From assembly GCA_950097015.1 (NCBI GenBank), contig CATNEN010000003.1, positions 6,262,001 through 6,326,000 on the forward strand: a stretch of 64,000 nucleotides of DNA, in the 5' to 3' direction. This DNA is from Macrostomum hystrix. Its lineage: Eukaryota; Animalia; Platyhelminthes. A model generated the notes under the pieces. The model was not told the origin of the DNA. It saw nothing but the letters and a program-made list of their open reading frames with translations, and did not search any database. A program made the translations under genes and the position numbers. Positions 1 through 23,225 of the stretch are shown here, in pieces; positions within the stretch are counted from its first letter, which is position 1; each line of letters begins with the position of its first letter.

Positions 1-93
1 GCGGCTGCGCCCCAAATGAATAAGGCCTCGCCGCAGAATCGAGCTCAGGGACCTCGGTGCGAGAGGTGCTCTGCCACTTGACCCCTTTTGTAC

Positions 94-2668
94 CCGTAAA
101 AGCTCCGAATATGACGACGGTAAACATCCACCAGAATGCCATGACAGTCCGGGGCGACATTGCGAATGGATAAAAGTCCTGGCCCTGCTGCAAGAAGCTG
201 CCAATGATACTCCAGATGTACTCTTGAAGCCAGATCTCGTCCGCTACAGCGTACTCAAGGCGTAGATTGTAAGCTGAGAAGGGAGAGTATCTAGCCAGAA
301 TCCACATGAACAATGAGCCGAAGGCAACCGTACCAAGCAGTAGGAACCAGACTGAGGGGCTGAGCGGCGTGAACACATTCCAGATCTTCGTGTCTCGCGG
401 AGGCTTCGGTACTAGAACAGCGGTTGATTGGTCAAACAGTGGCGTCGAGAAATCAACAACTGAATCACGAATGGATGTCTTCGTAAAAGGACCGCAGCCT
501 AGATCTGAAATCTAAAGGCGATTTTATTAATACAAAATAAGGTATCAAGCAAAAACAATATTTTTGCTGTTCCTCAGAATTCAAGTTTACCAACCCCTCT
601 CTGGACCTCTCCGACACATCCGGAAAAATAAGGCTTGCCAGGTTGTGGAGCTCCCCAGTTTCCATCGTCGGGAGCTTTTGTTACGAAACTGAAGCGGTGG
701 TCGGCAACACGCATAATTAAATTCTTGAAACATTTAGTAAAAACAGAGAAACAAAAAAGACATCTCTCGTCATCCCAAAACCCACCGAAAGTCCATTTTT
801 GCGGCAACGATTTCCAAAATGTCACGAGTCATGCCGTGAATGATGACGGTTTTGTTTGGAAATTGTGCTACATAGTCAGTCATTGGAGATGTCTGTAAAA
901 AATGCGACAAAATAAAATACGAGCACGATCTAGTAAATATTTAAAAAATCCCTACTGGGGGAGCGCAGACAATGAGTGTCTCGTTCTTGAAGCCCATGAA
1001 GGTGTTGGGAAAGGCCAGGCTCACTCCCTTGTAGCGAAACTGCTTGCTCAGAGAGCCGCTCGACACATCGAACTCAGCGGACTTCAGCATCGAGATCGGA
1101 GACCATCGCAGCTCATTGTAGGACGCGACCACTTCGACACCTTGTGAGCTCAAGTGTCTGCTTGAGCTGTTGTACGAGATGAGGCCACGCTGAGTGTCAT
1201 AGTTGCTCATCTGCAGCATCGAGTGGGTTCATGGCAGGTGAGTGAGTAAGTGAGTGAGTGCAGCGACTCACTGGACTCTGACATCATGTCTAAATGTGAG
1301 CAGCTCACGCTGAGCAGTTTGCTGAGCACAGTCGATCCCGATGTCCAGTGCTGCAGCGGAAAGCACGAGGCGTTGCTCGGAGAGAATCCCGGATCCATCA
1401 GCGAGTCGTTCAGCGCCTTGGCCACGGCTTCCACCGCATCCACGAACCGAGCGTCCAGACTCTGCTCAATGTGGTGCGGTGCGGTGCGGTGCGGTGATTG
1501 AGCTGTGACTCACTCACTCACGCTGATGACAGACGTGAGCAAGGCAGCACTGCAGTGTGACAGTCTCACCCGAATTGAGTCCAGCTGGCACTGAGGAAAC
1601 ACATCCATCACTGCTGCTGTGCAGTGAGTGAACACGCTGCCTCTCAGCAAAGCAACGTTCGCGTTCGCTGGCGTCACGCTGAGCACATCCGCCTTGGACA
1701 GTCCAGTGTCGAGAATGAGCCAGAAGTAGTTCTGCTGCATGACTGCAGCTTCACTGGCCAGCCTCAGGACTGAGAGCGCATTGCGAGGACTGGCCAGCAG
1801 CAGCAGCTTGAACAGTCTCTTCTTCACCAGACGCTTGAGGTGCTGCACCAGGCTCGGAGTGACAGAGGCGTTGGCAGTGTTGTCCACTTGGAATGTGAGA
1901 CTGCTCACTCCGGCAGCGGTGAGGCCGCTCTGCAGGCTCTGCACAACGGTGCTGCCTGCAGGCATTGGTGTGTTTGAATCGTCACAACTTGTACATCAGG
2001 ACAGAGTTTGAGCAGTGTGTACTCACTCTGATGCCCGTCGAAGAAGATGACCACATCACTGACCACCGAGTCGGCTGTGATGACGGACACTGCAGCAGCC
2101 ACCATGTTGTCGGAGCTGTGACTGCCCACCGCCGTGTAGTCTGAAAAAATCACAAAGCACAGCATTTTGGTTCATGCCCGACCAGAGATAAGTGCACTTT
2201 TAGTCCAGTTACCTTTGAGCAGCTGGGCCGAGTCGCACAAGCCGGTGGGCAGGGCGATGAGCAGCAGCTGCAGAGACTTGCTGAGTGAGCCCACCTGATC
2301 GAGCAGAGAGCAGCTGCCGACACCAATCAGAGCTGACAGGCCGCTCTCCGAGCACACTGCGGAGCGAGACACACTTTCACAATCAGCACTGTGCTCAGCA
2401 TTTCACAGGCAGCGCACAGCAAATGGCGAATGCCAGCAGCAGCCAACTCACCAGTCCTGACAGCCTGCTGTGAACTGCACCAGCTCACATTCACATGCAC
2501 ATATGAGAGTGTGTGACCCTGCAGCACTCTCCAGTTGGAGTTCACGCGTCTGGCGAACGCCTTCTCCATCAGCGACTCGCTCACCTGCCCGTCCTCCGTG
2601 ACCACACCGATCCTCAAGTTGAGGGCCGCTGAACAGGTCACCAAGACAAACAGGACAAAAACGAACAT
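94..2668 (-). CDS. Ionotropic glutamate receptor-like subunit, paralog 1 (5' part; S2/M4 exons lie beyond the left edge of the window)
   Basis: ATG at 2668 with signal peptide MFVFVLFVLVTCSAA. ATD exons ~2452-2668, 2212-2357, ~2027-2140, ~1522-1955, ~1310-1462, ~955-1210. S1 exons (HGMTRDILEIVAAKMDF; DDGNWGAPQ..FSGCVGEVQRG). Exon 94-511 carries GPFTKTSIRDSVVDFSTP, M1, pore loop GSFLQQG and M3. GT-AG phases are consistent. Confidence 0.9.
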
Positions 2669-2777
2669 TGCTGCTAAGTATCAGTTGTTCGTCTCTGTAT
2701 GCAGCTTGTAACTTTGTTGGAAAATTTATAAAAAAGGTTCCTGATGAACGACCGTTAGCAAGCTGCTGTATTTTAGA

Positions 2778-2801
2778 TTTATACAAGCAGCTCAGTCCAA
2801 T
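2778..2801 (-). promoter_or_regulatory. Putative TATA box (TATAAA) with an adjacent CCAAT element upstream of iGluR paralog 1
   Basis: Minus-strand TATAAA at 2778-2783, about 110 bp upstream of the ATG, with CCAAT at 2797-2801. Confidence 0.35.
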
Positions 2802-4738
2802 CACTGCTGCCTTGCAATCAATAATTTCATGCTCTACTGGCAATTTGTGTTTCGTTTGCTGTCACTCTGCTGGCTGATTGGGTGTGGATGAATATTTCCT
2901 ATACTGCAGTCCAAACAGCATCGTTTGAGCTTGAGTTTCATCACATCTGCTTGCTTCGATGCCGCTTAAGCTGTGTTGCTGTAGTTGTTTGCTTTTTCAG
3001 TGATTGTCATGTTCTGTAATATTACCTTTGAAGTTCTCTTAAACATGATTTCTTTAGTTCAATTTTTGAACATTTAGAGCCAGTTTGATTGGAACTATTG
3101 AAATCTTGCTTTTGATGCATAAGAAGCGAAATCGCTTTCTTTTATGTTTTAGAAATAATTGAGACGGTTTGAACGAGCGTGTCATTACTTCCCCTTCTCT
3201 CTGTGCTTGTTTAAGTTGTTTGCTCTCGCACGCCCTCTTGTTTGTACTTTCTCCTCTCTCCCTCCATATGTCCAACTTATTATCTATACTTCACTTCTCT
3301 TTCCTTTCCCTCGTCTCTGATTGGCTAGCTGCTCGTCTCTCTTTCCTCACCCCCTCCTTTTCAGCTCTTACCCTCTGACCCGTCCTTACTCGTGTTACCC
3401 TTCTGCCCCCTCCTATCTCTTGGTTAAAATATTTTAATCATCGGCTAGAGTGCTTTGGCCTGCTGTTTTTGATTCGTTTAGTACCGTAAACACTTGCCCT
3501 TTTTGCGAAGACTGAATTCATTTTAAGAAGTCATTACATGCATGGTGTCCATGTAACTAACAAATATCAAGGACGACAATTGGTATAGGTTTACAACTTT
3601 TCGCATTTCTTTTTCACTGTTAATTTATCGTCACATTTAACGTGAATTACTTCATTCACTGTTATAACTTGCCTACAACGCTACTGACAGTAAGTTACTT
3701 CGGGAAATTTTAAGCTTTATTTGGTATTGAGAACTGCCGAATGAGTGCGAATTCTAATCCCCTGGTATTGTCCAATTTGATTCCATCCAAACTATTTTGA
3801 TCGCTGTTTTCCGATTACAATAGTCTCAGCAAATCTTCTTTTTACGTTTCCGTTTAATTTTGAAATCATTAAAAATGTAAATTGTTAATAATTTGTTGGT
3901 TCTTTTTGCTGCTTGGAGCAACGCAAGCACACGAAACTCAAGAACACGGACCAATATTTTGTTGCGCATCTTCTGAAACAAGAATCAATTCGCCAGCTCT
4001 TCAGACCATCGAGATATTCGATGGTTCTTGCCGAAGGTCTGATTTTTCCCAAAAGCGCTAGTGTATTGCATACAGCGCTACACACGAATTAGCACTGCGC
4101 CTCAGTGCGGCCTTGCCAGGCCTTCAAAATTTATCAGAATGTCACCCGAAAGTGCCTGCATCATCTCAGTCTTCTGTGGTTACCTAACTTTATCTAGTCG
4201 GACTGCTGGACCTTCAATGGCTACAACAGGTGGAAATAGGCCACTATGAACACCCTGACGCCAATTTCTAGATTTCCACTGATCAAGCCAAAATACTAGA
4301 TGCAGCTCAACCACAGGACACCCTCAGTTAGTCTGTCAACCAATCAGTCACCACACAACGCTGTTAGCATTCGGGCGCTGCTAAAAATGTTCTCGGGGGA
4401 GAAATTCTACCTAATTGGTATAAAAATGGCTTGGCAGTCCTACTGTTAATTAAATAAATGTGCTGCGAAGTAGTGCTGGTTTAAACAAGCAGTGAATTTG
4501 TGCTCAAATCAACATTTTTGTTAGAAAAGCATGCCGGTGATGAGACACATACGTGTAGTTTCGTTCGATTCCAAGATTCTCTGTAGATAAGTTTTTAAAC
4601 ATTCTTGCCTGCATGAATAGCCGTTTATCTTGCTAACTAAGCAAGCAATAAATCTAATGTGTAACTTGCAGTGCGGTGCAAGGTGCTGATATAAATAATT
4701 CACTCCATCCAGTCATATCCGCTGCGGGAAAGTCTTCC

Positions 4739-7700
4739 TCAGTAGATTATGCAATCTAGAGGCTTTTTATCGCCAAGTTGAGTCCAGACCAGCTCAATGA
4801 GCAGGATGAGCAGACCGATGCAGTACAGACTGCCAGTGACGATCAGACAGCCGCCAACGCCCTCCATGTCGATGGAGTCGGCCTCAGTGGATCGACCACC
4901 GCCGCTGCTGCCGCAATTGATGTAGCTCTCCTTGGACCAATAGTGACTAAACAGGCGCTGCATTAGGCCTGACTCGTGCATCGTCTGCAGACTGCGTTTG
5001 TGACGTCACAGTTGGAGTCAGGATTAGTTTGGGCAGTAATTTATAGTCTCTCATACTAGATACCTAAAAATTATACTTTTTGGTCCTTCTCAACTTCTAA
5101 ATAATAATAATAATTGCAAGAAGGCAGTTGGTCACTGGCACATCATTTGGTGACATTAGGCCCACAGCCAGCAGAAGCTCATTCCGCTGACTTCAAAACA
5201 CTCGTAAGCAAATACTGTACGAAGGAACGATCAAGGTGGTGTACATCTGCCATAACTTTTTGATTGCCATGGGCAGTGTACAGTCTCACCGTTTTTGAGA
5301 TTTGGTCCGTGAAGCCTTTACCGCTCAGCCAATCGCCCTCATTATCAATTCGTATTAAAAATGTCACAACCTACTCCAAAAACTCGTATTATTAATACCC
5401 GCATATGTTTCTTACTGAAAGTCAAACATTTCAGCATAGAATGCATCTTCCGGGTACATGAAAGCCACAGTGGCCTGGTTGAAAGTTTCAGACATCATGT
5501 AGAATTGGGAGCAGTTCTTGATTGCCATAGCTAGCAGGTAGGTGTAGTCGTTGATGCACGCGGCGTCACTTCTTGCTGGCTGAAAGCACAAAATATCTTA
5601 CTCTCACACTCGATTGAAACTGCGAGTAATATACTTAATATAATGTGAGTATTCACTGAGCAAAAATCTAGGAGAATCACGGAGGATCTAGCACACGTTT
5701 TATAAAGTGCAAATATTATAGTACTATTTGCAAAATGCATTAATTGTGGCCCTGAATGATTGCGGACGAAGCGCGGTAAAACTTACAATTTGAGGACAAT
5801 CCTCAGGCGGATGCATCACGACCATAGTGTCAGCCAACTGTTTGTAAATGCCAGATTTAGCGGTTGTCAGAAGCGTGTACACGTTTGTGTCAGCTGCCAC
5901 GTACGGCTTGATGGTCGCTTGTGACACCAGGTCCGAGAGCGTCTTGATAGGATACTCGGTGACTGTGACTGTTAGGTGAGCAGTCAAATCGCCTGGAAAT
6001 CAAATCAGAAGCAAAGAATAATAAAAGAATCAACTGACTAGCTTACTTAGATAGAAATGCAGCAGTGACTAAGGAATGGAAATTTTCTATTCCGAACCAG
6101 TAAATGCTCCATAGATTATGACAGTCAACATCCACCAGAATGCCATGACAGTCCGGGGCGACATTGCAAGCGGATAAAAGTCCTGGCCCTGCTGCATGAA
6201 GCTGCCGACGATACTCCAGATGTACTCTTGAAGCCAGATCTCGTCCGCTACAGCGTACTCAAGGCGCAGATTGTAAGCTGAGAAGGGAGAGTATCTAGCC
6301 AGAATCCACATGAACAGTGAGCCGAAGGCAACCGTACCAAGCAGTAGGAACCAGACAGAGGGGCTGAGCGGCGTGAACACATTCCAGATCTTCGTGCCAG
6401 GCGGAGGCTTCGGCACTAGAACAGCGTTTGATTGGTCAAACAGTGGCGTCGAAAAGTCGATGACAGAGTCGCGAACCGAGGTCTTGGTGAATGGTCCGGC
6501 TGCGAGATCAGCGATCTGAAAAAATGGGATGCAAAGCCTAGATAATTAAGGCAAATCTATTTGCTTTGCTTAGTTGGGGACCAATAACATGTAGTGAGCC
6601 ACTGCTTAGGGGCCTATTGGTGTCTCACTAGCTGTCAGTAGCCCCACCTGCAAGGTAGCTTAGGTGTCCCCTTTTTGCTAGCATTGAGTGGCTGCCCGGC
6701 CCGCCCTCTCTGGCGTTGTCTGGTCTGCCCCTCTCTGCCCTTCCCTTCCCGGTGGCGCCTGCACTTAGAGTGTGTCGTCTCTTCCCCCCAGGGATGAGTC
6801 ATCACCTCTTTGTCCCGCGCTGGCTTTGTTGTCCCTTGTCCTTTTCTTTGTGTGTGGTTGTCTGCACTCAGTCAGCACGTGATTCTCCTCATGCGACTGG
6901 CCTCTCTCTTTGTCTTTTAAAGTGCAAGTAAACATGTTTACTGCACTTGGGGCTTTTATTATGGGACAGGAGCCTACGTAGGAGTGACGTTTCTGGCGCC
7001 ACTGACGTCAGTTGCTATTTTTAGAAACCACGTGATTCCATCACGTGTTTTCTAACTCTGCACTGACCCTATGGGAGGCCCCTGCCTATAAAAGAAAGCT
7101 CCCCGCTCTTCTGGCCCTCACCCTTCCACTGTCTATCATTAACGTTTTCTCTGACTTATTTCAGTCTCTATTGTCAGTGCCATCGAGTGTCTAAGTTTCC
7201 TACTTCAGTCTCTGCATGTGACTGCACGTAAGCTCAGTTCTGGCTAAGTCCCGAAACTAACTTAGCCTTCCACCCCGAGCTACGCAGGACACTGACAGCC
7301 TGTAATTGCAACTGAAACTCTGCACTGTGTGCTTCTCGAGACTTCGTGACTTTATCTCTTTCGGGCCAAGGATCCTTCACCTCACCGAAGGCAGAAGTCC
7401 TGACGCCCTGGTGGCAGCGCTACTACTACACTACCTAGAAATCTTGGACTTCATATTGGAGTTCGCCGGATCCCGCATTGTTAGCAGGACGACCGGTACA
7501 ACAAACACTTTTGAATTTCGCACAAGGAAAATTTCTGAACTGAAAACTGTCGATTCCACCTTAGTCACACTGTTTGATTGTCTCGTTGACTACTCTAGCC
7601 TTTGTTATAAAATCTGCAATTTCATAGCTGAGCAGTCAATTCAGTTCCCAGTGAGATCTTCAAATTGGTAGAGTTTATTCCTTAGTTAACATCAACTAAT

Positions 7701-10450
7701 ATATCTACTACTAGTTATCGACGTAGTTCTAATATACGCCGCAGCTGTGTCTTGTTTAAGACAACGAAGACAGCTTGGGAAAAAAACTTCCGTTAAAGTC
7801 AAAAGCGTAATCAGTGAACATTTTCTTGTTTGGACGAGTAAACCCGTTTAAACCCTTCCCGGCCAGGCGACGTTTGCTATTTACTAATGCTTATCAAAGC
7901 TCTCTTATTTTGGCTGGAAAAAAGTCACGACCAAAATTTCGCAGAAAAACCATGGAAAAACCTCACGACGGTTATCCGCAAACAGCAAGCAGCACAATTA
8001 CACCGGCAAAAGCGAGCTAATGTGCAACTGAGAACACGATCCTAAAGCCAGCGACTAGACTCCTTACACAAGTGTGGTACTTCGTGTGCGTACTGACTTA
8101 GTCGACGAAATAGACAGAAATATCTCATTGAAGTCTGCGAATCAAATGTGGCAAGATGAGGGACAAGTGTCTTTTGCTAAGTCAACTCTTTACTTTGTTT
8201 GCGTAACTTAAACTTTCGGAGTTCACAGGAGACTGTAAACCAATATAGCTTTTATCAATACTTTCATCGAAAACCACCAAAAACAGAGAAACTCGCGTTT
8301 TTCGCAACCTACTCAAATGTGCTCAAATATCAAAGAACGAAATAGATTTTCGCCTCACGCCTCGCTGAATCTCCCCAACGCATCCGGAGAAGTACGGCTT
8401 GCCCGGCTGTGGAGCGCCCCACGCCTCGTCATCCGGAGCCTTTGTGATGAACCTAAAAAGCAGAAACAATCAATCATTGATTCGACCAGTCATTGGTGCT
8501 CCGCAAAAGAGTGAAGCGCCATCTTGCCGAAATTCCATTTTGGAGGAGACTAGGTCCAGAATGTCGCGGGTCATGCCGTGAATGCTAACAGTGTTGTTGG
8601 GATACTTGATGTCGAAATCGGTCATTGGCGAACTCTAAAACAATTAGAACAATGTTATTTGCACAAAAAATAAAAAGACATATATATTGTTAACCAGCCA
8701 GGAAAATCACAAAAAAACCCACTGTTGGGCTACAAATAACAATAGTCTGGTTCTTGAAGCCCATGAAGGTGTTGGGAAAGGCCAGGCTCACTCCCTTGTA
8801 GCGAAACTGCTTGCTCAGAGAGCCGCTCGACACATCGAACTCAGCGGACTTCAGCATCGAGATCGGAGACCATCGCAGCTCATTGTAGGACGCGACCACT
8901 TCGACACCTTGTGAGCTCAAGTGTCTGCTTGAGCTGTTGTACGAGATGAGGCCACGCTGAGTGTCATAGTTGCTCATCTGCAGCATCGAGTGGGTTCATG
9001 GCAGGTGAGTGAGTGAGTGAGTGCAGTGACTCACTGGACTCTGACATCATGTCTAAATGTGAGCAGCTCACGCTGAGCAGTTTGCTGAGCACAGTCGATC
9101 CCGATGTCCAGTGCTGCAGCGGAAAGCAGGAGGCGTTGCTCGGAGAGAATCCCGGATCCATCAGCGAGTCGTTCAGCGCCTTGGCCACAGCTTCCACCGC
9201 ATCCACGAATCGAGCGTCCAGACTCTGCTCAATGTGGTGCGGTGCGGTGCGGTGCGGTGATTGAGGTGCGATGCTTGAGTCACTCACTCACGCTGATGAC
9301 AGACGTGAGCAAGGCAGCATTGCAGTGTGACAGTCTCACCCGAATTGAGTCCAGCTGGCACTGAGGAAACACATCCATCACTGCTGCTGTGCAGTGAGTG
9401 AACACGCTGCCTCTCAGCAAAGCAACGTTCGCGTTCGCTGGCGTCACGCTGAGCACATCCGCCTTGGACAGTCCAGTGTCGAGAATGAGCCAGAAGTAGT
9501 TCTGCTGCATGACTGCAGCTTCACTGGCCAGCCTCAGGACTGAGAGCGCATTGCGAGGACTGGCCAGCAGCAGCAGCTTGAACAGTCTCTTCTTCACCAG
9601 ACGCTTGAGGTGCTGCACCAGGCTCGGAGTGACAGAGGCGTTGGCAGTGTTGTCCACTTGGAATGTGAGACTGCTCACTCCGGCAGCGGTGAGGCCGCTC
9701 TGCAGGCTCTGTACAGCGGTGCTGCCTGCAGGCATTGGTGTGTTTGAATCGTCACAACTTGTACATCAGGACAGAGTTTGAGCAGTGTGTACTCACTCTG
9801 ATGCCCGTCGAAGAAGATGACCACATCACTGACCACCGAGTCGGCTGTGATGACGGACACTGCAGCACCCACCATGTTGTCGGAGCTGTGACTGCCCACC
9901 GCCGTGTAGTCTGAAAAAATCACAAAGCACAGCATTTTGGTTCATGCCCGACCAGAGATAAGTGCACTTTCAGTCCAGTTACCTTTGAGCAGCTGGGCCG
10001 AGTCGCACAAGCCGGTGGGCAGGGCGATGAGCAGCAGCTGCAGAGACTTGCTGAGTGAGCCCACCTGATCGAGCAGAGAGCAGCTGCCGACACCAATCAG
10101 AGCTGACAGGCCGCTCTCCGAGCACACTGCGGAGCGAGACACACTTTCACAATCAGCACTGTGCTCAGCATTTCACAGGCAGCGCACAGCAAATGGCGAA
10201 TGCCAGCAGCAGCCAACTCACCAGTCCTGACAGCCTGCTGTGAACTGCACCAGCTCACATTCACGTGCACGTATGAGAGTGTGTGACCCTGCAGCACTCT
10301 CCAGTTGGAGTTCACGCGTCTGGCGAACGCCTTCTCCATCAGCGACTCGCTCACCTGCCCGTCCTCTGTGACCACACCGATCCTCAGGTTGAGAGCCGCT
10401 GTGCATGTCATTAGAAAAGAAATGACAGTCAGAATCACCGCCGCCATCAT
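4739..10450 (-). CDS. Ionotropic glutamate receptor-like subunit, paralog 2 (complete, multi-exon)
   Basis: ATG at 10450. ATD block ~8720-10450; S1 exons ~8358-8452 and 8528-8635; exon 6098-~6515 (AAGPFTKTSVRDSVIDFS, M1, SFMQQG, M3); S2 exons 5787-5992 and ~5415-5579; final M4 exon 4739-4991 ending PLDCIIY*. Confidence 0.92.
6590..7430 (+). mobile_element. Putative solo-LTR-like insertion in an intron of iGluR paralog 2
   Basis: Begins TGTAGT and ends ACTACA (TG..CA with a 6-bp inverted repeat); internal TATAAAAG at ~7086. The homologous intron of paralog 1 is only ~80 bp. No TSD found. Confidence 0.4.
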
Positions 10451-10949
10451 GGTCAAAAGTTAGTTTCAGTTGGAAGTGATCAACCAATTCCGACTATTTG
10501 ATATTTTCGCTTGTCTTATAGTTCTTGCCTCAACCAATCAGAAGCCTCCTGTCTCGTCCAGGAAGTCACAGCAAATCTCTAGGATCGATTTGGGCACTAG
10601 CAACGAACCTTTAGGCGTCGTACTTTTTGTTTGATGCTGTTCTATAAGTCTATTATGCAGAACAAAATTATAGAATTCCATTTGCGCTTCTTTCTGCTAG
10701 GTAAATGTATTGAAGTTTCCATTTTGATGGTCTTGCATTCAGGTAACCGGATACGACTAAATTCTTGACACTCTTTAGATTTCCGAACTCTGGAATCGAT
10801 TTTCTCTTTTGTGACCTGGCATAACCAATATATATTAAATTGTTATATTTTCACTTTAATGACTGTTATCATGCCAAGTTTTTATACATAGGCTTTTATA
10901 GAAATGAAAACTTGACTTTAAACGTAAATGGGCTGTAAGGTCTGCCCCG

Positions 10950-11620
10950 TGGATTGCCCACCGAGGATTTCCCATCGAGGATTGCCTGACGAGGATTTCA
11001 TGCCGAGGATTGCCCACCGATGATTGCCCACCAAGGATTGCCCACCGAGTATTTCCCACCGAGGATTACCCACTTATGATTTCCAACTGAGGATTTCCCG
11101 CCGAAAATTGACCATCAAATATAATCCACCGAGGACTACCCACCAGGGAATACACACAGAGGATACCCACCGAGGATTTCCCACCGAGGACTACCCACCA
11201 GGGAATACACACAGAGGATTACCTACCGAGGATTTCCCACCGAGGACTACCCACCAGGGAATACACACAGAGGATTACCCACCGAGGATTTCCCACCGAG
11301 GACTACCCACCAGGGAATACACACAGAGGATTACCTACCGAGGATTTCCCACCGAGGACTACCCACCAGGGAATACACACAGAGGATTACCCACCGAGGA
11401 TTTCCCACCGAGGACTACCCACCAGGGAATACACACAGAGGATTACCTACCGAGGATTTCCCACCGAGGACTACCCACCAGGGAATACGCACAGAGGATT
11501 ACCCACCGAGGATAATTTCCCACCGAGGGTACCCACCAGGGAATACACACAGAGGATTACCCACCGAGGATTTCCCACCGAGGGTACCCACCAGGGAATA
11601 CACACAGAGGATTTCCCACT
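10950..11620. repeat. Minisatellite: 56-bp higher-order repeat of four 14-bp subunits
   Basis: GAGGATTACCCACC-GAGGATTTCCCACC-GAGGACTACCCACC-AGGGAATACACACA repeated, with degenerate 14-mers at the edges. Confidence 0.95.
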
Positions 11621-12009
11621 TAGGATTGCTGACCAATGACTGCCCACCAAGAATTTCTCCCCGACGATTGCAGTCACAGTTTGGTTTCTAAGCAATCTTT
11701 TTGCTGGAACAAAGCTGGTATATTTTACTTGAATACGCAGTCTATGCACAAGCCTGGCCCATCGTATACTCCCATTAATTATCGATTAGGGAGTTGTACT
11801 TTTAAAATTAGGCTTGCAGCATTTAAATGGAGTATTCACTCGAATATGAGTATCTATGATAGCTCGTACAGTAGCCTAACGATTATTCACAAAAAATCTT
11901 TTAAGTGTAACTCAAAGAAAAAAAGAGAGACTTCTGAGAGATAAAATTTGAGTCACCTGTCTAAACTCTCACAATTAATATCCAGCAAGCCTAACTGATT
12001 TTGCCCTTG

Positions 12010-12340
12010 CAGTCACAGACACATTCACAGTTTGCTGTCACAGACATTCACAGTTTGCTGTCACAGACACATTCACAGTTTACTGTCACAGACACATTCA
12101 CAGTTTGCTGTCACAGACAAATTCACAGTTTGCTGTCACAGACACATTCACAGTTTGCTGTCACAGACATTCACAGTTTGCTGTCACAGACACATTCACA
12201 GTTCACTGTCACAGACATTCACAGTTTACTGTCACAGACACATTCACAGTTTACTGTCACAGACACATTCACAGTTTGCTGTCACAGACAAATTCACAGT
12301 TTGCTGTCACAGACACATTCACAGTTTGCTGTCACAGACA
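12010..12340. repeat. Minisatellite, ~25-bp unit
   Basis: TCACAGACACATTCACAGTTTGCTG tandem copies. Confidence 0.95.
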
Positions 12341-12798
12341 AAAAAACATCCAGTGTGTTGTGGATGTGGAAAAATGAAAAAAAGTACTTTCAGCCATACT
12401 GATATATAGTATCCGGCTGGTATGAAGCTAAGATGTTCGACTAAACATGAAGCAAATCTATTTATCTTTAAGAATTCTACTGTGAAATATCTTCCAAGTA
12501 GATTTGCTTTAAACAAAATCTCAAAGACAAAGGCTTTGAAATAAACTCGAATTTTACTGTCTTGACTGCCTCAAAAAGGCTGCCGAACAAAGTTCAAAGT
12601 CTGAGGATCGGAATCACGTGAGCTGCACGCGCCACGTGCGTGATTGCATGAGTGGTTCGTCCTTGACCTTGATCTAGAAACGACAACAACCTCAAGATCA
12701 CGTGATTGGCTTCCCTGGGCTGAGAACCAAGGGGTGGGTGCACGCCTGAGATGTGATTTACACGTATAAAGATTAAAAAGAGGTATAATTGTTAGTGC

Positions 12799-15700
12799 TC
12801 AGTAACAGACGCAGTCTAACGGTTGTCGGTTGGTTAATTTAGTCCAGATCAGTTCCATCAGCAGTATTAGAAGTCCGATTGCGTACAAACTGAGGGCCAC
12901 AATGAAGACACCCCCAGCGCTGTCCAGATTGATGGAATCGGCTTCAGTGGCTCTGCCCTCAGTGCAAACGTTTTCGTTAGACCAAAACTGTTGGAACCAG
13001 CGCTGCATCTGGCCAGCCTCAATCAGTTTCTGAATGCTGAAATGTGGCGGTGGAAATCACGGGTATAGATTAATCATGGGTTCCAAATCGAGCATAGAAG
13101 CCAGGTCTGGAATCGAAGCTAGGCGTGGAATCGAAGCTAGGTGTGGAATAGACGAAAGGCGTGGAATCGAAGCTGATTTAGAATCGAAGCTAGACTTAAA
13201 ATCGAGGCTAGATTTAGTTTCGATGCTAGATTTAAAGATTTAGAATCGAAGCTAGATTTAGAATCGAAGCTAGATTTAGAATCGAAGCTAGACTTAGTAT
13301 CGAAGCTAGACTTAGAATCGATGCTAGATAAAGAATCGATGCTAGATTTAGAATCGAAGCTAAACTTAGAATCGAAGATAGATGTGGAGTCGAATCTAGG
13401 TGTGGAATCGAAGCTAGATGTGGAATCGAAGCTAGACTTATAATCAAAGCTAGATAAAGAATCGATGCTAGATTTAGAATCAAAGCTAGATGAGGAGTCG
13501 CAGCAGGAATCGAAGCAACGAGAACCTTAAGAACCATGGGAATGTGAACCATAAAAAATTAATTCCTTTTTAACCTACTAAAAATTGAAGGCCTGAGTGT
13601 AGACAGAATCCTCAGGAAATGCGAAGGCCACAGAGGCTGTGTTAAATAGCTCGTTTGCCAGGTAAAAATCTGTGCAATTTTTTTTAGCTAGATATAGCAG
13701 GGGAGTGTAGTCACCAAGGCACGCATTGTCTGTTCTCGGTGGCTGGAATAGATAAAATGGGCAGGTCATGTAATACAAAGATCTGCTATAGCGCATTAGA
13801 GGAGTCATTAAAACAGTTGGACCTTGAAAGGGCCGTTTTAGTTTAACATTTTAATATATATTTCTTTATAATTAAGCATTTCAGTTTTCCCTGTTCGTTA
13901 CTGGGAGTAGAGAAAGACAAATTATGCTCCAAAGTTGACATGATATATTTGATTTAACTTAATTAGACCAAGAAAAAGGCCTCAGCCTATATAATATTCT
14001 TACGTTGGATGGACATTCATAATCTCGGGCCTCCAAAGCGACCATCATATCAGCAACTTTCTTGTAAATCCCAGACTCAGCCGCTGTGAGCAGGGAGTGA
14101 AGATTTGAGCCAACGCGAACGTACGGCTTGATTTCGGTTTGAGACACCAGATCTTGCAGCGTCCTGATTGGATAGTCGGTGACAGTCACAGTGAGGTGGG
14201 CGGTTAGATCGCCTGAAGATTAGTCCCAAAGTGGTTTTGGTAATGTTTGTAAGAGTTCAGCCTCAGAGACGTTCAGCACATCTCAGACGTTCAGCGCGCC
14301 TCGCAGACGTTCTGCCAACTTCGAGGACGTTCAGCAAACTTTAAAGACGTTCAGCAAACTTTAAAGACGTTCAGCACACCTCACAGACGTTCAGCCAACT
14401 TCGAAGACGTTCAGCAAACTTTAAAGACGTTCAGCACACCTCACAGACGTTCAGCACACCTCACAGACGTTCAGCACATCTCACAGACGTTCAGCACACC
14501 TCACAGACGTTCAGCCAACTTCGAAGACGTTTAGCAAACTTTAAAGACGTTCAGCACACGACACAGACGTTCAGCACATCTCACAGACGTTCAGCACACC
14601 TCACAGACGTTCAGCACACCTCACAGACGTTCAGCACACCTCACAGACGTTCAGCACATCTCACAGACGTTCAGCACACCTCACAGACGTTCAGCACATC
14701 TCACAGACGTTCAGCACACCTCACAGACGTTCAGCACACCTCACAGACGTTCAGCACACCTCACAGACGTTCAGCACACCTCACAGACGTTCAGCACATC
14801 TCACAGACGTTCAGCACACCTCACAGACGTTCAGCACATCTCACAGACGTTCAGCAAACCTCATAGACGTTCAGCACACCTCACAGACGTTCAGTACACC
14901 TCACAGACGTTCAGCACACCTCACAGACGTTCAGCACATCTCACAGACGTTCAGCACACCTTACAGACGTTCAGCCAACTTCGAAGACGTTTAGCAAACT
15001 TTAAAGACGTTCAGCAAACGACACAGACGTTCACATCTATTACTTCGTACCGTGCTTACCATTAAAAGCTCCTAGTATAATGACAACAAACATCCACCAA
15101 ATAGCCATGGCAGTCCTTGCGGACATTGCAAACGGATAGAAATCGTGTCCTTGCTGCAGCAGGCTTCCAGTGGTGCTCCAGATGTACTCCTGCAGCCATA
15201 TTTCATCAGCAATAGAGAATCCCAGCTCTAAATTGTAGGCCGTGAAAGGTGAAAAATAGGCCAACAGCCAGGATGTGAAGGCCATCACAATCAGAGCTAC
15301 CAGAGTCAGTAGCCAGGAGTTCATTGTGAACGGTGTGAACACTCTCCACATCTTCGATGCAGGCCTTGGTCTGGGCAGTAAAATAGCGTTCGACTCTTGA
15401 AACAGAGGCGTCGAGAAGTCGATAACAATCTCGCGAGCGGCAGTTATCGTGAACGGGCCAGCAGCGAGTTGCACAGCCTGGAGAGAAAATAAACGAGTAA
15501 ACTAATCTGCTGATTGAGCGATGCTTGAAAATTATTCAAGATCTCACAGATAAATAATAATATTATTAATAATGATAACTGATTACACCTGCCCTACCAA
15601 TATGGGCCAGATGTGCAGCCGACAGCACATCCACAGCTATTGCGCGGCGCATCTGAAAGCTGCGAATGACTGTTCAGTCCATGGACTGATGAAACGTCAC

Positions 15701-18007
15701 ACCCATACCCTGAATTATTCCAGCTAATAATGGTACACATTTCACAACTGGGTGAACTGAAGCAATGCAAAGTTAAGTGTCTTGCAGAAAAGACAAAAAT
15801 TGTTCAATTAGAGTCGGGAATCGAACCCACGACCTCGAACGACTATGGTTACGATTCCTGCTACGTCCTCTGAAGTCACAGACTACAGATCCCACAAAAA
15901 GAGATCTCGCAGAAGATCGTACCCCTCTCTGCAATTCGCCGACGCAACCAGTGAAGTAGCTGGAGTTAGCCTGTGGGGCACCAAACCTTGCGTCAACTGG
16001 CCGCTTAGCAATAAACCTGAAAAGTTTTCATGAGAATCGCTTTTTCACGTACCGCACAAAATGAGAAACAAAAGCTAAATCAAACATGACTTTACCCACT
16101 TACTCAAAGTCTAAAACGACAGACAAGAAGCGCAGAAGCTCAAAGGTCATACCTCGAATCACAACAGTGTTGTTTGCTAGTGCTCGGTCGAAGATGGTCA
16201 TGGGAGATATCTGAAATTTCGTCGCGAAAACTTTCTAGGTTATGCGAGCTTAAAACAGAAGCCAGAAACACAAACCTCAGGGGTACAAATGACAATAGTC
16301 TGGTTCTTGAAGCCCATGAAGGTGTTGGGAAAGGCCAGGCTCACTCCCTTGTAGCGAAACTGCTTGCTCAGAGAGCCGCTCGACACATCGAACTCAGCGG
16401 ACTTCAGCATCGAGATCGGAGACCATCGCAGCTCATTGTAGGACGCGACCACTTCGACACCTTGTGAGCTCAAGTGTCTGCTTGAGCTGTTGTAGGAGAT
16501 GAGGCCACGCTGAGTGTCATAGTTGCTCATCTGCAGCATCGAGTGGGTGCATGGCAGGTGAGTGAGTAAGTGAGTGAGTGCAGTGACTCACTGGACTCTG
16601 ACATCATGTCTAAATGTGAGCAGCTCACGCTGAGCAGTTTGCTGAGCACAGTCGATCCCGATGTCCAGTGCTGCAGCGGAAAGCAGGAGGCGTTGCTCGG
16701 AGAGAATCCCGGATCCATCAGCGAGTCGTTCAGCGCCTTGGCCACAGCTTCCACCGCATCCACGAATCGAGCGTCCAGACTCTGCTCAATGTGGTGCGGT
16801 GCGGTGCGGTGCGGTGATTGAGGTGCGATGCTTGAGTCACTCACTCACGCTGATGACAGACGTGAGCAAGGCAGCACTGCAGTGTGACAGTCTCACCCGA
16901 ATTGAGTCCAGCTGGCACTGAGGAAACACATCCATCACTGCTGCTGTGCAGTGAGTGAACACGCTGCCTCTCAGCAAAGCAACGTTCGCGTTCGCTGGCG
17001 TCACGCTGAGCACATCCGCCTTGGACAGTCCAGTGTCGAGAATGAGCCAGAAGTAGTTCTGCTGCATGACTGCAGCTTCTCTGGCCAGCCTCAGGACTGA
17101 GAGCGCATTGCGAGGACTGGCCAGCAGCAGCAGCTTGAACAGTCTCTTCTTCACCAGACGCTTGAGGTGCTGCACCAGGCTCGGAGTGACAGAGGCGTTG
17201 GCAGTGTTGTCCACTTGGAATGTGAGACTGCTCACTCCGGCAGCGGTGAGGCCGCTCTGCAGGCTCTGTACAGCGGTGCTGCCTGCAGGCATTGGTGTGT
17301 TTGAATCGTCACAACTTGTACATCAGGACAGAGTTTGAGCAGTGTGTACTCACTCTGATGCCCGTCGAAGAAGACGACCACATCACTGACCACCAAGTCG
17401 GCTGTGATGACGGACACTGCAGCACCCACCATGTTGTCGGAGCTGTGACTGCCCACCGCCGTGTAGTCTGAAAAAATCACAAAGCACAGCATTTTGGTTC
17501 ATGCCCGACCAGAGATAAGTGCACTTTTAGTCCAGTTACCTTTGAGCAGCTGGGCCGAGTCGCACAAGCCGGTGGGCAGGGCGATGAGCGGCAGCTGCAG
17601 AGACTTGCTGAGTGAGCCCACCTGATCGAGCAGAGAGCAGCTGCCGACACCAATCAGAGCTGACAGGCCGCTCTCCGAGCACACTGCGGAGCGAGACACA
17701 CTTTCACAATCAGCACTGTGCTCAGCATTTCACAGGCAGCGCACAGCAAATGGCGAATGCCAGCAGCAGCCAACTCACCAGTCCTGACAGCCTGCTGTGA
17801 ACTGCACCAGCTCACATTCACGTGCACGTATGAGAGTGTGTGACCCTGCAGCACTCTCCAGTTGGAGTTCACGCGTCTGGCGAACGCCTTCTCCATCAGC
17901 GACTCGCTCACCTGCCCGTCCTCCGTGACCACACCGATCCTCAGGTTGAGAGCCGCTGTGCAGGTCATTAGAAAAGAAATGACAGTCAGAATCACCGCCG
18001 CCATCAT
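12799..18007 (-). CDS. Ionotropic glutamate receptor-like subunit, paralog 3 (complete, multi-exon)
   Basis: ATG at 18007. ATD block ~16276-18007; S1 exons ~16104-16210 and ~15922-16016; exon ~15060-15477 (AAGPFTITAAREIVIDFSTP, M1, SLLQQG, M3); S2 exons ~14004-14212 and ~13579-13742; M4 exon 12799-~13036 ending PLDCVCY*. Confidence 0.92.
13095..13520. repeat. Intronic minisatellite, 18-bp unit
   Basis: GAATCGAAGCTAGATTTA variants in the last intron of iGluR paralog 3. Confidence 0.9.
14265..15033. repeat. Intronic minisatellite, 20-bp unit
   Basis: TCACAGACGTTCAGCACACC repeated ~38 times. Confidence 0.95.
15585..15850 (-). mobile_element. tRNA-derived SINE (family A, CORE-like central segment)
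   Basis: Minus strand: B-box GGTTCGATTCCC, central GCAAGACACTTAAC..CACCCAG..AAATGTGTACC segment, (TTA)n-like tail. Shares CAGATGTGCAGCCGACAGC with the copies at 20710 and 58672. Confidence 0.75.
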
Positions 18008-18616
18008 GGTCAAAAGTTAGTTTCAGTTGGAAGTGATCAACCAATTCCGACTATTTGATATTATCGCTTGTCCTAAAGTAATAATTTGCGTGAAGGTACT
18101 CAGTATTTGTCCCTCTATCAAGAGAAACTTGTATTTGGCAGGGATCGAAAATGAATGCCTCCCGGCCTGGTCCGTAGCTGTATGCCAATATACATTCGAC
18201 GGTTCGTGCTTCACTTTCTGGATCTGTCGAGTGTGTAGGAAGTCTTTGAGTTGTGCCACTCTGCAAACAAGCGTAACCACTCCGATGAGTGTTTGGAATC
18301 AATAATACACCCGATGCATGCTCTGCAATATAGCAGTTCCAACAATAGGCTAACGCACTGTGAGGCTGAGCTAAAATCTATCGATTCTTAAAATTTGCTC
18401 AACTTCTTCTCCAATCCCGTTTTTGTCATTGTGACGACTGATATGTTGGTGCTAATTTATTCATAGAGAACTCACTCATTGAATTGAATGCAAATTATTG
18501 TGAATCGCTGGTTCGGATTTAAACATCTAGAATGATTAATGGCACACCAGTGCACCATTGATATTTTTCTCGTAGAAATTCTATTGATTTTAGAAGAACT
18601 TTAATTTTTAATGGTT

Positions 18617-19226
18617 TGAAGGACTTCAAGAAGCGTGTGTTGGTTGATGCACCATTTAAGGACTTCAAGAAGCGTGTTGGTTGATGCACCGTTGAAGGAC
18701 TTCAAGAAGCGTGTTGGTTGATGCACCATTGAAGGATTTCAAGAAGCGTGTTGGTTGATGTACCATTGAAGGACTTCAAGAAGCGTGTTGGTTGATGCAC
18801 CGTTGAAGAACTTCAAGAAGCGTGTTGGTTGATGCACCGTTGAAGAACTTCAAGAAGCGTGTTGGTTGATGCACCGTTGAAGGATTTCAAGAAGCGTGTT
18901 GGTTGATGCACCGTTGAAGGACTTCAAGAAGCGTGTTGGTTGATGCACCGTTGAAGGATTTCAAGAAGCGTGTTGGTTGATGCACCGTTGAAGGATTTCA
19001 AGAAGCGTGTTGGTTGATGCACCGTTGAAGGACTTCAAGAAGCGTGTTGGTTGATGCACCGTTGAAGGACTTCAAGAAGCGTGTTGGTTGATGCACCATT
19101 GAAGGACTTCAAGAAGCGTGTTGGTTGATGCACCGTTGAAGGACTTCAAGAAGCGTGTTGGTTGATGCACCATTGAAGGACTTCAAGAAGCGTGTTGGTT
19201 GATGCACCATTGAAGGACTTCAAGAA
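18617..19226. repeat. Minisatellite, 37-bp unit with an internal palindrome
   Basis: GAAGGACTTCAAGAAGCGTGTTGGTTGATGCACCGTT, ~16 head-to-tail copies, no spacers. Confidence 0.95.
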
Positions 19227-22535: not shown

Positions 22536-23225
22536 CGAGATAAGTTATTGATTTTTCTAATTCGAACTAAAACTAAAAAAATACTTTTTAAGTAGCGGCA
22601 AAAAAATCAATTTTTTGTTTCTCCATAGCCGAGTTTTGTTTGGATGGAATGCGAGCAGACTATCTGCATTGCATATATTGCACGTATTTGGGAGAGTAAA
22701 TTCAAAATCTTCCAAGCCAATAATAAAGAATAGAAGACAATTTTTCGGTCAAAATTGTTTAGAAAACGTATCAAAAGACAAATCTAGAATATTTAGAATA
22801 CAATTAAAAAATTGATCAAATCATGACTATTCTTAGAAAATAGAAATGACACATTTACAAAGTCAGGCCAGATTTACAGAAACATTTAATTTGGCAAAGC
22901 AAAAAGACATAAAAAATCACAGTAGCATAGCTGCTAGACCGGATAATGATTTGTTAAAAAATAATTAACAGCTTTTAGCTATTGAGTCTGTAAACAGGGC
23001 CACATCCACCCTAATCTCCAATTTCCCATTAAGCAATGAGGAATTGAGTTTTGTTAAAGGACGCCAACTGTTTATTTACCCTACACTGAGATTTGAACTC
23101 ATGACGAACAAGTTAGACTAAAAAACGTTGTTCGAACAATTGGATAATTTAGAAAGACCAGGTCTGATGCAGATGTGTAAACAATAGCCTCTGATTCAAT
23201 TGAGAAAGTGTTTTAACACACACAT

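What the first reader, a model, noticed from the sequence alone, without database searches (positions are those of the whole stretch)
984..17959. Constant-ATD / variable-LBD iGluR array: a 1.65-kb N-terminal block is homogenised across three otherwise divergent receptors
Seen: 984-2632, ~8751-10402 and ~16303-17959 are nearly identical, including five introns, with only scattered private SNPs and indels. Identity ends abruptly at the ATD/S1 boundary (FKNETLIVCAPP vs FKNQTIVICSPT vs FKNQTIVICTPE). S1, S2 and M4 exons and their introns are highly diverged (e.g. GMTRDILEIV vs GMTFELLRFL). Known: the ATD directs subfamily-selective tetramer assembly and the LBD sets ligand specificity. Inference: recurrent domain-restricted gene conversion keeps one shared assembly module on old, diversified ligand-binding cassettes, giving freely co-assembling subunits that could form a combinatorial, possibly chemosensory, receptor system.
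Basis: partly seen in the sequence, partly recalled or inferred. Interest (0 to 1): 0.85.

Follow-up and report, generated by a model that had tools for sequence, protein, structure and literature searches.

The report
Receptor genes sharing one copy-corrected front domain
Nine glutamate-receptor-type channel genes of a Macrostomum flatworm carry an almost identical front (amino-terminal) domain on old, very different ligand-binding and pore halves, because repeated gene conversion keeps overwriting that one domain; a sister species shows the same pattern, and whether the shared domain serves subunit assembly is untested.

Summary
**Observation: confirmed and larger than reported.** Three minus-strand iGluR genes (A, B, C) share a 1.65-kb block at 98.3-98.9% identity, five introns included. 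Six more intact genes 400 kb away (D-I) carry the same block at 95-98%.

**What the block is.** It is the mature amino-terminal domain (ATD). It starts just after each gene's own signal peptide and ends at the FKN(Q/E)T linker.

**Evidence for gene conversion:**
- Synonymous divergence is 0.008-0.074 in the ATD. In the ligand-binding and pore half it is saturated (about 1.0 for A-B, at least 1.9 or incalculable otherwise).
- In trees with Macrostomum lignano proteins, ATDs group by species. Ligand-binding/pore halves pair as orthologs across species (AU tests 1e-4 to 1e-51).
- The block also shows raised GC3 (0.73-0.76 against 0.52-0.64), mosaic site patterns and unconverted islands in two genes.

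**Artefact excluded.**
- Short-read depth over the block is 7-12 times the flanks.
- Spliced transcripts from an independent study cross the border.

**Verdict.** Recurrent domain-restricted gene conversion is well supported. The co-assembly and chemosensory reading remains untested. The process is known, for example from fish protocadherin clusters. I found no report of it for iGluRs. Earlier notes of this scan (s1-344295, s1-355510) describe the same thing on other DNA of this genome.

The parts
978..2631 (-). Homogenised ATD block, copy in gene A (exon 1 from just after the signal peptide to the linker in exon 6, with five introns)
   Evidence: It is 98.4% identical to copy B and 98.3% to copy C.
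8745..10401 (-). Homogenised ATD block, copy in gene B
   Evidence: Short-read unitig depth is 540-940 here against about 79 in the flanks, and the unitig breaks at 8751-8768.
16298..17967 (-). Homogenised ATD block, copy in gene C
10402..10522 (-). Extension shared only by B and C: signal peptide and about 70 bp upstream of the start codon (copy B)
   Evidence: 8727-10522 = 16280-18079 at 98.9%. (B-C identity 0.94-1.00 where all other pairs fall to about 0.4).
17968..18079 (-). The same B/C-only extension, copy C
1..2668 (-). Gene A, iGluR-type, cut by the window edge. ATG at 2668; pore exon about 92-511. Exons 10-12 lie outside the window, and the last exon is 8.1 kb further on.
4739..10450 (-). 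Gene B, complete 12-exon iGluR-type gene (ATG 10450, stop 4741-4739)
12799..18007 (-). Gene C, complete iGluR-type gene. ATG at 18007. Ligand-binding/pore exons lie at about 16103-16234, 15896-16027, 15043-15501, 13962-14219, 13581-13850 and 12799-13056; these are HSP limits, not exact splice sites.
10222..10450 (-). Gene B exon 1 (own signal peptide, then start of the ATD)
   Evidence: (intron 10127-10221 seen in RNA).
9983..10126 (-). Gene B exon 2 (ATD)
9797..9910 (-). Gene B exon 3 (ATD), core of the variable island
9340..9725 (-). Gene B exon 4 (ATD). The nearest ESM Atlas clusters are ANF_receptor.
9072..9224 (-). Gene B exon 5 (ATD)
8723..8977 (-). Gene B exon 6 (end of ATD, linker, first residues of S1). 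The block border at about 8745 lies inside it.
   Evidence: (intron 8978-9071 seen in RNA).
8528..8634 (-). Gene B exon 7 (S1). The only in-frame donor is GC, not GT.
8359..8452 (-). Gene B exon 8 (S1)
6098..6515 (-). Gene B exon 9 (end of S1, M1, pore loop, M3). Pfam Lig_chan 7.9e-13.
5787..5992 (-). Gene B exon 10 (gate motif GAFTG|DLTAHLTV, S2)
   Evidence: One search shows transcript contig X5 record 24 with 0 mismatches, spliced to exon 11.
5416..5579 (-). Gene B exon 11 (S2)
   Evidence: (loose end that matches 5565-5579, read).
4739..4991 (-). Gene B exon 12 (end of S2, M4, short tail, stop)
9727..9997 (-). Variable island inside the constant block (exon 3 and the adjoining parts of introns 2 and 3). 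The copies fall into four types: A/B/C, E/G/H/I, D and F.
6520..7640 (.). High-copy repeat inserted in intron 8 of gene B (not part of the homogenised block)
   Evidence: unitig depth is 4000-9000 against about 79.

Best explanation
**What it is.** The window holds three members (A, B, C) of a family of at least nine intact iGluR-type channel genes. All lie on one contig of a Macrostomum genome. The assembly size and contig count match the published M. hystrix assembly.

**Two halves with different histories.**
- Each gene keeps its own promoter, its own signal peptide and its own ligand-binding, pore and tail exons. These are old, and older than the split from M. lignano.
- The stretch coding for the mature amino-terminal domain, about 1.65 kb with five short introns, is repeatedly overwritten between paralogs. 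The process is non-allelic gene conversion.
- All copies in one species therefore stay 95-99% identical. The domain as a whole still drifts between species.

**Why the borders are sharp.** Tracts are confined to the zone of continuous high identity. That makes the borders sharp and self-sustaining. An island around exon 3 escapes conversion.

**Shown here.**
- The discordant histories of the two halves.
- The mosaicism of the block.
- The GC3 footprint.
- The true multi-copy state of the block.
- Transcription and splicing of gene F across the border, and of gene B at its exon 10-11 junction.

**Inferred.**
- The molecular route: conversion without crossover. It fits because both flanks of every copy stay unique and because copies in opposite orientation take part.

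**Consequence and open question.**
- All nine subunits present one nearly identical ATD surface.
- In AMPA and kainate receptors the ATD is the domain that pairs subunits. That statement rests on established knowledge of those families.
- Whether the sameness is selected for co-assembly, or is a neutral or GC-biased by-product, is open.
For: **Identity of the block and its extent.**
- Block identity and borders.
- Nine copies at 95-100% in two clusters 400 kb apart and in both orientations.

**Divergence of the two halves.**
- ATD core, 346 codons: dS 0.008-0.074 (mean 0.045), dN mean 0.0098.
- Within the block, intron diversity is 0.030 and third-position diversity is 0.033.
- Ligand-binding/pore half, 412 codons: dS 1.06 for A-B; otherwise at least 1.9 or incalculable. 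Protein identity is 54-68%.

**Trees with M. lignano proteins.**
- ATD tree: nine M. hystrix and six M. lignano sequences split by species. Support is 94/100, the branch length is 0.24, and all bootstrap trees agree.
- Ligand-binding/pore tree: D-P0166 100/100, E-P0004 100/99, A/B-P0001 96/100, C-P0152 97/94, F-P0005 92/51. M. hystrix monophyly is rejected at p-AU 1.3e-51.
- The same ortholog groupings are rejected for the ATD at p-AU 6e-41, 4e-6 and 1e-4.
- ATD protein identity is 96.5% within M. hystrix, 95.8% within M. lignano and 80.6% between species. Orthologous ligand-binding/pore halves are 64-83% identical.

**Footprints of conversion.**
- GC3 is 0.73-0.76 in the ATD against 0.52-0.64 in the rest of the same genes.
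- 208 of 561 pairs of informative sites fail the four-gamete test.
- The islands of D and F have no other match in the genome.

**Not an artefact.**
- Short-read unitig depth is 540-940 over the block against about 79 in the flanks. One 281-nt unitig at depth 680 has no mismatch.
- Spliced transcript contigs from a 2020 study join the constant ATD to gene F's own 5' end and to its own S1 exon.

**Identity of the domain.**
- ANF_receptor scores 4.5e-16 in the M. lignano ortholog P0166.
- P0166 aligns end to end with GluK2 at 8.9e-41.
- The AF2 model of P0167 matches the GluK3, GluD1 and GluA3 ATD structures, best E 5e-17.

**Recurrence.** The same pattern occurs in two other clusters of this genome.
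Against: - No conversion event was observed directly.
- M. lignano was available only as protein. Several of its gene models are fragments or fusions, so its dS and introns could not be compared.
- The short-read run with the depth signal is probably from the same project as the assembly, so it is not an independent animal.
- Both borders coincide in nine genes. Random tract ends alone would not give this. It needs either anti-recombination at diverged flanks or selection, and I could not tell which.
- Transcript evidence covers genes F and B only. The B evidence is one contig at depth 2.6.
- Gene B has a GC donor at intron 7.
- Gene A has a transposon-sized insertion before its last exon, so not every copy is proven functional.
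Confidence: 0.88

Rival explanations
1. One recent burst of domain replacement, not a recurrent process. A single ATD segment was copied once into each gene by segmental duplication or exon shuffling, and the copies have simply aged since.
For: - All nine copies share nearly the same two borders.
- Overall divergence is low at 1-5%.
Against: - M. lignano shows the same within-species sameness around its own ATD version. The event would have to recur independently in each lineage.
- Pairwise dS ranges nearly ten-fold, from 0.008 to 0.074.
- 208 of 561 site pairs are incompatible with any single tree.
- The B-C tract runs further upstream than all the others.
- D and F each keep an old island flanked by converted DNA on both sides.
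Confidence: 0.07
2. Unequal crossing-over with birth and death of chimeric genes, rather than conversion, produces the shared front halves.
For: - The genes are arranged in tandem.
- B and C share the promoter-proximal DNA as well. A single crossover inside the ATD would give this.
Against: - A single crossover swaps everything on one side of it. Yet eight of the nine genes keep a unique signal peptide and 5' flank as well as a unique 3' half.
- Genes E and F lie in the opposite orientation to D, G, H and I and still share the block.
- The two clusters are 400 kb apart.
Confidence: 0.03
3. Assembly or polishing artefact: truly diverged ATDs were collapsed to a consensus.
For: - Near-identical repeats are a known weak point of polishing.
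- The best DNA run may come from the same project as the assembly.
Against: - Raw short-read unitigs carry the block's exact words at 7-12 times single-copy depth, and they break exactly at the border.
- Spliced transcripts from a different study cross the border.
- The independent M. lignano gene set shows the same pattern.
- The block (1.65 kb) is short for a PacBio long-read assembly to mis-join; PMC10468722 states that PacBio long reads were used, read lengths were not checked here.
Confidence: 0.01
4. Extreme purifying selection on the ATD alone, without any sequence exchange.
For: dN/dS in the block is about 0.2, so the protein is under constraint.
Against: - Introns and synonymous sites are as uniform as the protein.
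- Between species the ATD has changed at about 20% of residues. That is as much as the ligand-binding/pore half of orthologs.
- The trees of the two halves conflict.
Confidence: 0.01

Closest known systems
Regional gene conversion in clustered protocadherin genes of teleost fish (fugu and zebrafish; PMC1852091, which cites Noonan et al. 2004)
   Same: - Tandem receptor paralogs carry one part at more than 99% identity and another part that is old and diverged.
- Homogenisation is lineage-specific.
- GC3 is raised in the converted part.
- The diverged part carries the orthology signal (one search compared).
   Different: - In protocadherins the tract lies inside one large variable exon (EC4-EC6), and the genes also splice to shared constant exons.
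- Here the tract spans six exons and five introns, and every gene has its own physical copy.
- The tract matches one folded domain from its first strand to its linker.
- It links two clusters 400 kb apart, with members in both orientations.
AMPA, kainate and delta type ionotropic glutamate receptors (GluK2, GluK3, GluD1, GluA2/3)
   Same: - Full ATD, S1, M1-M3, S2, M4 architecture.
- End-to-end alignment of the ortholog P0166 to GluK2 (E 8.9e-41).
- ATD fold match.
- The S1 Pro-x-Thr ... Arg motif is kept in all nine genes.
   Different: - The gate motif is GAFTG/DLTAHLTV (variants AYTGDLTAHL and CFGGNLAAYL) instead of SYTANLAAF.
- The position aligned to the alpha-amino-binding Glu (GluA2 E705) is Ala, Tyr or Asp. 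This is my reading.
- All close relatives found are from Macrostomum.
- No known iGluR subfamily has paralogs with one shared ATD.
Earlier notes of this scan on other pieces of the same genome (s1-344295, s1-355510)
   Same: They report that the ATD, and in one case the promoter, of iGluR paralogs was overwritten by a neighbour's copy.
   Different: - Those notes concern other clusters with two or three genes each.
- Here the group has nine genes in two clusters.
- Here a cross-species test with M. lignano was run.

Membership tests
Ionotropic glutamate receptor (iGluR) superfamily | Pore and transmembrane module (Pfam Lig_chan PF00060) | tested here: met
   Window exon 6090-6545 scores 7.9e-13, 48.9 bits against a cutoff of 30.8. 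The M. lignano orthologs score 1e-21 to 1e-26.
Ionotropic glutamate receptor (iGluR) superfamily | Bilobed S1/S2 ligand-binding domain (PF10613 / SBP_bac_3) | tested here: met
   A single window exon scores below the cutoff (20.7 bits). The ortholog P0166 scores 1.6e-14, 54.4 bits. S1 and S2 align along GluK2. The joined window model was not handed to any search tool.
Ionotropic glutamate receptor (iGluR) superfamily | Amino-terminal domain of LIVBP / ANF_receptor type, as in AMPA, kainate, delta and NMDA subunits | tested here: met
   - Single window exons give no Pfam hit.
- Window exon 4 is nearest to ANF_receptor clusters in the ESM Atlas (score 0.94, 21 of 30 hits).
- Orthologs P0166, P0170 and P0167 (about 80% identical to the window ATD) score 4.5e-16 to 4e-17.
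- The model of P0167 matches the GluK3 ATD 3olz at E 5e-17, TM 0.62.
Ionotropic glutamate receptor (iGluR) superfamily | Canonical SYTANLAAF gate and the Arg/Thr/Glu amino-acid-binding triad | tested here: not met
   - The gate reads GAFTG/DLTAHLTV and variants.
- Arg and Thr of S1 are kept in all nine genes.
- The residue aligned to GluA2 E705 is Ala in six genes, Tyr in two and Asp in one. This is my reading of the alignments.
- So this is a divergent branch, and glutamate itself need not be the ligand.
Concerted evolution by interlocus gene conversion | Paralogs within a species are more alike than orthologs between species, in the tract only | tested here: met
Concerted evolution by interlocus gene conversion | Uniformity extends to introns and synonymous sites | tested here: met
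Concerted evolution by interlocus gene conversion | Mosaic tracts: site patterns that no single tree can explain | tested here: met
   208 of 561 site pairs fail the four-gamete test. The islands in D and F add to this. GENECONV and RDP themselves were not run.
Concerted evolution by interlocus gene conversion | GC enrichment of the converted tract (GC-biased conversion) | tested here: met
   GC3 is 0.73-0.76 against 0.52-0.64. Block introns have GC 0.54.
Concerted evolution by interlocus gene conversion | Direct observation of conversion events, for example polymorphic tracts in a population | not testable with these tools
   Only assembled contigs of public runs were available.
Variable-exon / constant-exon gene cluster (protocadherin or UGT1 type) | One physical set of constant exons spliced to alternative variable exons | tested here: not met
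   Every gene has its own copy of the constant part, with private differences and its own flanks.

The most novel reading that the evidence does not exclude
**Claim.** The shared ATD is kept uniform by selection, as a common assembly handle.
- Any of the nine subunits can then pair with any other and form mixed tetramers with different ligand-binding domains.
- Each cluster-specific ATD type (this one, the C34 type and the C1 type) would define a separate assembly group.
- The exon-3 island would tune pairing within a group.

**Significance.** This would be a constant/variable receptor code built by gene conversion instead of alternative splicing. It would be a new way to organise an iGluR family.
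Probability: 0.25. Interest if true: 0.8.

Novelty: new member of a known kind. Interest (0 to 1): 0.6.

Why it matters
- **A clean natural example.** One folded domain of a multi-domain receptor evolves in concert across nine paralogs in at least two species, while the rest of each gene keeps its own deep history. The borders sit at the domain's edges.
- **For iGluR biology.** It yields a natural set of subunits with the same ATD and different ligand-binding domains. At least two further sets in the same genome carry other ATD types. This is close to a ready-made domain-swap experiment on whether the ATD decides which subunits assemble.
- **For annotation and phylogeny.** Trees built on whole proteins or on the ATD will mis-date these duplications and hide the orthology with other Macrostomum species. 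Only the ligand-binding/pore half carries the gene history.

Tried and rejected
- **Pfam on single ATD exons** of the window gave nothing at E up to 1. The domain was identified through M. lignano orthologs instead.
- **The joined spliced model** of the window genes was not given to any search, fold or complex tool. Exons were sent by reference, and database proteins served as full-length stand-ins. Concatenated codon alignments were built only inside scripts, from the session's files.
- **The search for homologous proteins with P0151** returned only three proteins.
- **First dN/dS run** was wrong. MAFFT dropped stop symbols and shifted codons. It was redone.
- **Complex prediction** of an ATD homodimer (P0166 residues 30-432, two copies) gave no answer, score 0.05 against a mark of 0.32. 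It is no evidence either way.
- **Rfam** found no RNA family in 1-19000, so no embedded RNA gene explains the conserved introns.
- **Literature.** No paper combines gene conversion, ionotropic glutamate receptor and amino-terminal domain. The two papers with 'concerted evolution' plus iGluR terms, judged by their titles and abstracts, are about insect genomes rather than this family. The sixteen Macrostomum papers that mention glutamate receptors have titles and abstracts on other subjects.
- **Import of the D and F islands** from the more distant clusters was tested and rejected. They have no match elsewhere in the genome.

Full report
**1.

Self-comparison of the window gives three copies of a block.
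- 978-2631 = 8745-10401 at 98.4%.
- 978-2640 = 16298-17967 at 98.3%.
- 8727-10522 = 16280-18079 at 98.9%.

Translation of all frames shows three iGluR-type genes on the minus strand.
- Gene A has its ATG at 2668 and runs off the left edge of the window.
- Gene B runs from ATG 10450 to the stop at 4739.
- Gene C runs from ATG 18007 to the stop at 12799.

I built a 12-exon model of B from open frames and splice signals, and from spliced transcript contigs where they exist (joints 8978-9071, 10127-10221 and 5580-5786).

The block covers exon 1 from just after the signal peptide, exons 2-5, most of exon 6 and all five introns between them. In 60-bp steps, mean pairwise identity falls from about 1.00 to 0.71 and then to 0.36 at window 8745. 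That point lies inside exon 6, at the FKN(Q/E)T linker.

**2. It is bigger than three genes.**

The window is C3:6262001-6326000 of a 220,453,370-base genome in 42 contigs. The block has six more copies at 95-98% near C3:5.83-5.87 Mb. There are more distant relatives at 72-74% on C34 and C1.

I fetched that region and the DNA left of the window. Exon mapping shows six further complete genes, D to I, in both orientations. Each has its own S1, pore, S2 and M4 exons.

Projected onto B's model, eight of the nine ATD reading frames are open with AG/GT splice sites. F differs around exon 3 and needs its own splice sites there.

Each gene has a different signal peptide. Only B and C share theirs, together with about 70 bp upstream.

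The 3' border of the block falls within 18 bp in all nine genes. The 5' border falls within about 46 bp, B-C apart.

**3. The two halves of each gene have different ages.**

| Part | Codons | dS | Other measures |
|---|---|---|---|
| ATD core | 346 | 0.008-0.074, mean 0.045 | dN mean 0.0098 |
| Ligand-binding/pore half | 412 | 1.06 for A-B; otherwise at least 1.9 or incalculable | protein identity 54-68% (A-B 82%) |

- Within the block, introns are as uniform as third codon positions (diversity 0.030 and 0.033). First and second positions are more uniform still (0.012).
- Introns beyond the border are unalignable.
- Selection on the protein cannot explain uniform introns and synonymous sites.

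**4.

A search of 1.84 billion representative proteins with B's pore exon found only 11 hits at E up to 1e-30. Eleven of the thirteen best hits looked up are named Macrostomum lignano. The other two are P0009, an unnamed ENA entry, and P0015, from the monogenean Cichlidogyrus casuarinus.

Several M. lignano entries carry an ATD about 80% identical to the window's: P0166/P0169 at 847 aa, P0170, P0167, P0171, P0168, and both halves of the fused model P0151. Each has its own signal peptide.

- **ATD tree.** Nine M. hystrix and six M. lignano sequences separate by species. Support is 94/100, the branch length is 0.24 and the within-species branches are about 0.01.
- **Ligand-binding/pore tree.** Each M. 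lignano protein pairs with one M. hystrix gene: D-P0166 100/100, E-P0004 100/99, A/B-P0001 96/100, C-P0152 97/94, F-P0005 92/51. Holding M. hystrix together costs 300 log-likelihood units (p-AU 1.3e-51).
- **Converse test.** Forcing the ATDs of D+P0166, C+P0170 or A/B+P0151b together is rejected at p-AU 6e-41, 4e-6 and 1e-4.
- **Protein identity of the ATD.** It is 96.5% within M. hystrix, 95.8% within M. lignano and 80.6% between them. Orthologous ligand-binding/pore halves are 64-83% identical.

So the ATD is not unusually constrained. It changes between species as fast as the rest of the protein and is made uniform within each species. This is concerted evolution. It has run in both lineages since they split, on gene lineages that are older than the split.

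**5. Further footprints of conversion.**
- GC3 is 0.73-0.76 in the block against 0.52-0.64 in the rest of the same genes. This is the footprint used for protocadherins (PMC1852091).
- Of 561 pairs of informative sites in the block outside the exon-3 island, 208 show all four combinations. No single duplication tree fits, and some variants are shared across the two clusters.
- Around exon 3 the copies fall into four types: A/B/C, E/G/H/I, D and F. For D against the other types dS in the island exceeds 1 (1.1-1.9); F's values are also above 1, but its alignment is uncertain in part of this stretch. Their islands of about 400 bp match nothing else in the genome.
- The islands look like old remnants flanked by converted DNA on both sides. 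That needs at least two tracts per gene.
- Conversion rather than crossover is inferred for three reasons. Both flanks of every copy stay unique, inverted copies take part, and the clusters are 400 kb apart.

**6. Not an artefact.**

Contigs of four public runs were laid on gene B.
- In the DNA run X1 the unique parts sit at word depth 77-81 and the block at 540-940. That is 7-12 times, matching nine assembled copies.
- A unitig ends and the next begins at 8751-8768, exactly at the border.
- A 281-nt unitig at depth 680 has no mismatch.
- Run X5, from a different study in 2020, holds spliced contigs. One joins gene F's private 5' sequence to the constant ATD. Another joins the constant exon 6 to F's own S1 exon across a GT-AG intron.
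- A third X5 contig joins B's exons 10 and 11 without a mismatch (read).

The genome's size and contig count equal those published for the PacBio-plus-Illumina assembly of M. hystrix (about 220 Mb, 42 contigs; PMC10468722). Earlier notes of this scan name the same species. I did not verify the species in any other way.

**7. What the proteins are.**
- B's pore exon hits Lig_chan at 7.9e-13.
- Single ATD exons hit no Pfam family. Exon 4 is nearest to ANF_receptor clusters in the ESM Atlas.
- The ortholog P0166 has ANF_receptor (4.5e-16), Lig_chan-Glu_bd (1.6e-14) and Lig_chan (3.9e-26). It aligns from residue 41 to 824 with GluK2 (8.9e-41).
- An AlphaFold model of the ATD-only entry P0167 (pLDDT 81.9) matches the ATDs of GluK3, GluD1, GluK2 and GluA3, best E 5e-17.
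- The branch is divergent. The gate reads GAFTG/DLTAHLTV.
- The S1 Arg and Thr are kept in all nine genes. The residue aligned to GluA2 E705 is Ala, Tyr or Asp, by my reading. The ligand therefore need not be glutamate, and it may differ between paralogs.

**8. The pattern recurs.**

Three genes on C34 share a 1.7-kb front block at 97.5-99.3%, while their pore exons are 88% identical. Genes on C1 share 1.0-1.2 kb at 97.5-98.7%, while their pore exons are about 74% identical. Each group has its own ATD type.

Earlier notes of this scan (s1-344295, s1-355510) describe such cases on other pieces. The scan has therefore found this before on other DNA.

**9. Function.**

Nine subunits with one ATD surface is a fact of the sequences. 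That this serves free co-assembly is inference from what the ATD does in AMPA and kainate receptors.

The one binding prediction gave no verdict. Expression could not be compared between genes, because the runs are held as contigs.

A neutral account also fits. Once the ligand-binding halves had diverged past the point where heteroduplex can form, conversion was confined to the ATD, and GC-biased repair did the rest. The coinciding borders and the exon-3 island, which is variable in both species, remain unexplained (notebook).

**10. Standing.**

Regional gene conversion in tandem receptor families is well known. I found no report of it for iGluRs or for Macrostomum.

I file it as a new member of a known kind, with moderate to high interest. 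The case is unusually clean, it is replicated across species, and it offers a natural test of ATD-directed assembly.

Noticed in passing
window 9727-9997 (gene B); L035:2529-2922 (gene D); L009:2451-2862 (gene F): A variable island around exon 3 sits inside the otherwise constant ATD. The versions in D and F are unique in the genome. The same exon-3 stretch is the variable part of the M. lignano ATDs. It could be a cold spot for conversion or a selected patch; this is unresolved.
   Followed up: partly
L039-L041 (C34:2356001-2384000) and L042-L044 (C1:5652001-5680000): Two further iGluR clusters show the same front-half near-identity. On C34 it is 1.7 kb at 97.5-99.3%. On C1 it is 1.0-1.2 kb at 97.5-98.7%. 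The pore exons are far more diverged in both. In C34 the last exon is also about 96% alike.
   Followed up: partly
window 6520-7640: A high-copy repeat lies in intron 8 of gene B. Short-read unitig depth is 4000-9000 against about 79 for single-copy DNA.
   Followed up: no
window 8526-8527: Intron 7 of gene B has a GC donor. No in-frame GT donor exists there. Whether B splices normally at this site was not seen in the transcript contigs.
   Followed up: partly
L034:5480-5731 and L038:2-973 (left of the window): Gene A's last exon lies 8.1 kb beyond exon 11. A PWWP-domain ORF (3.9e-17) sits on the other strand in between.
   Followed up: partly
window 21075-22544 and 23229-24460, minus strand: A tandem pair of Rab-type small GTPase genes (Pfam Ras 3e-20 and 2e-19), about 75% alike in DNA.
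   Followed up: no
window 26140-26577, minus strand: An ORF of the Tim17/Tim22/Tim23 family (2.3e-31).
   Followed up: no
window 34376-38076: Two identical 271-bp direct repeats (34376-34646 and 37806-38076) flank a 992-aa ORF with reverse transcriptase and RNase H domains. It looks like a young LTR-type retroelement. Observed only.
   Followed up: partly
window 10899-11513, 11957-12390, 13053-13563, 14181-15060, 18526-19375, 23614-24225, 24640-25104, 25652-25959: Many minisatellite arrays with periods of 14-37 bp. Several lie inside introns of gene C or between the iGluR genes.
   Followed up: no
window 15550-15788 and 58640-58873: A dispersed repeat of 240 bp at 80% identity. One copy lies in an intron of gene C.
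   Followed up: no
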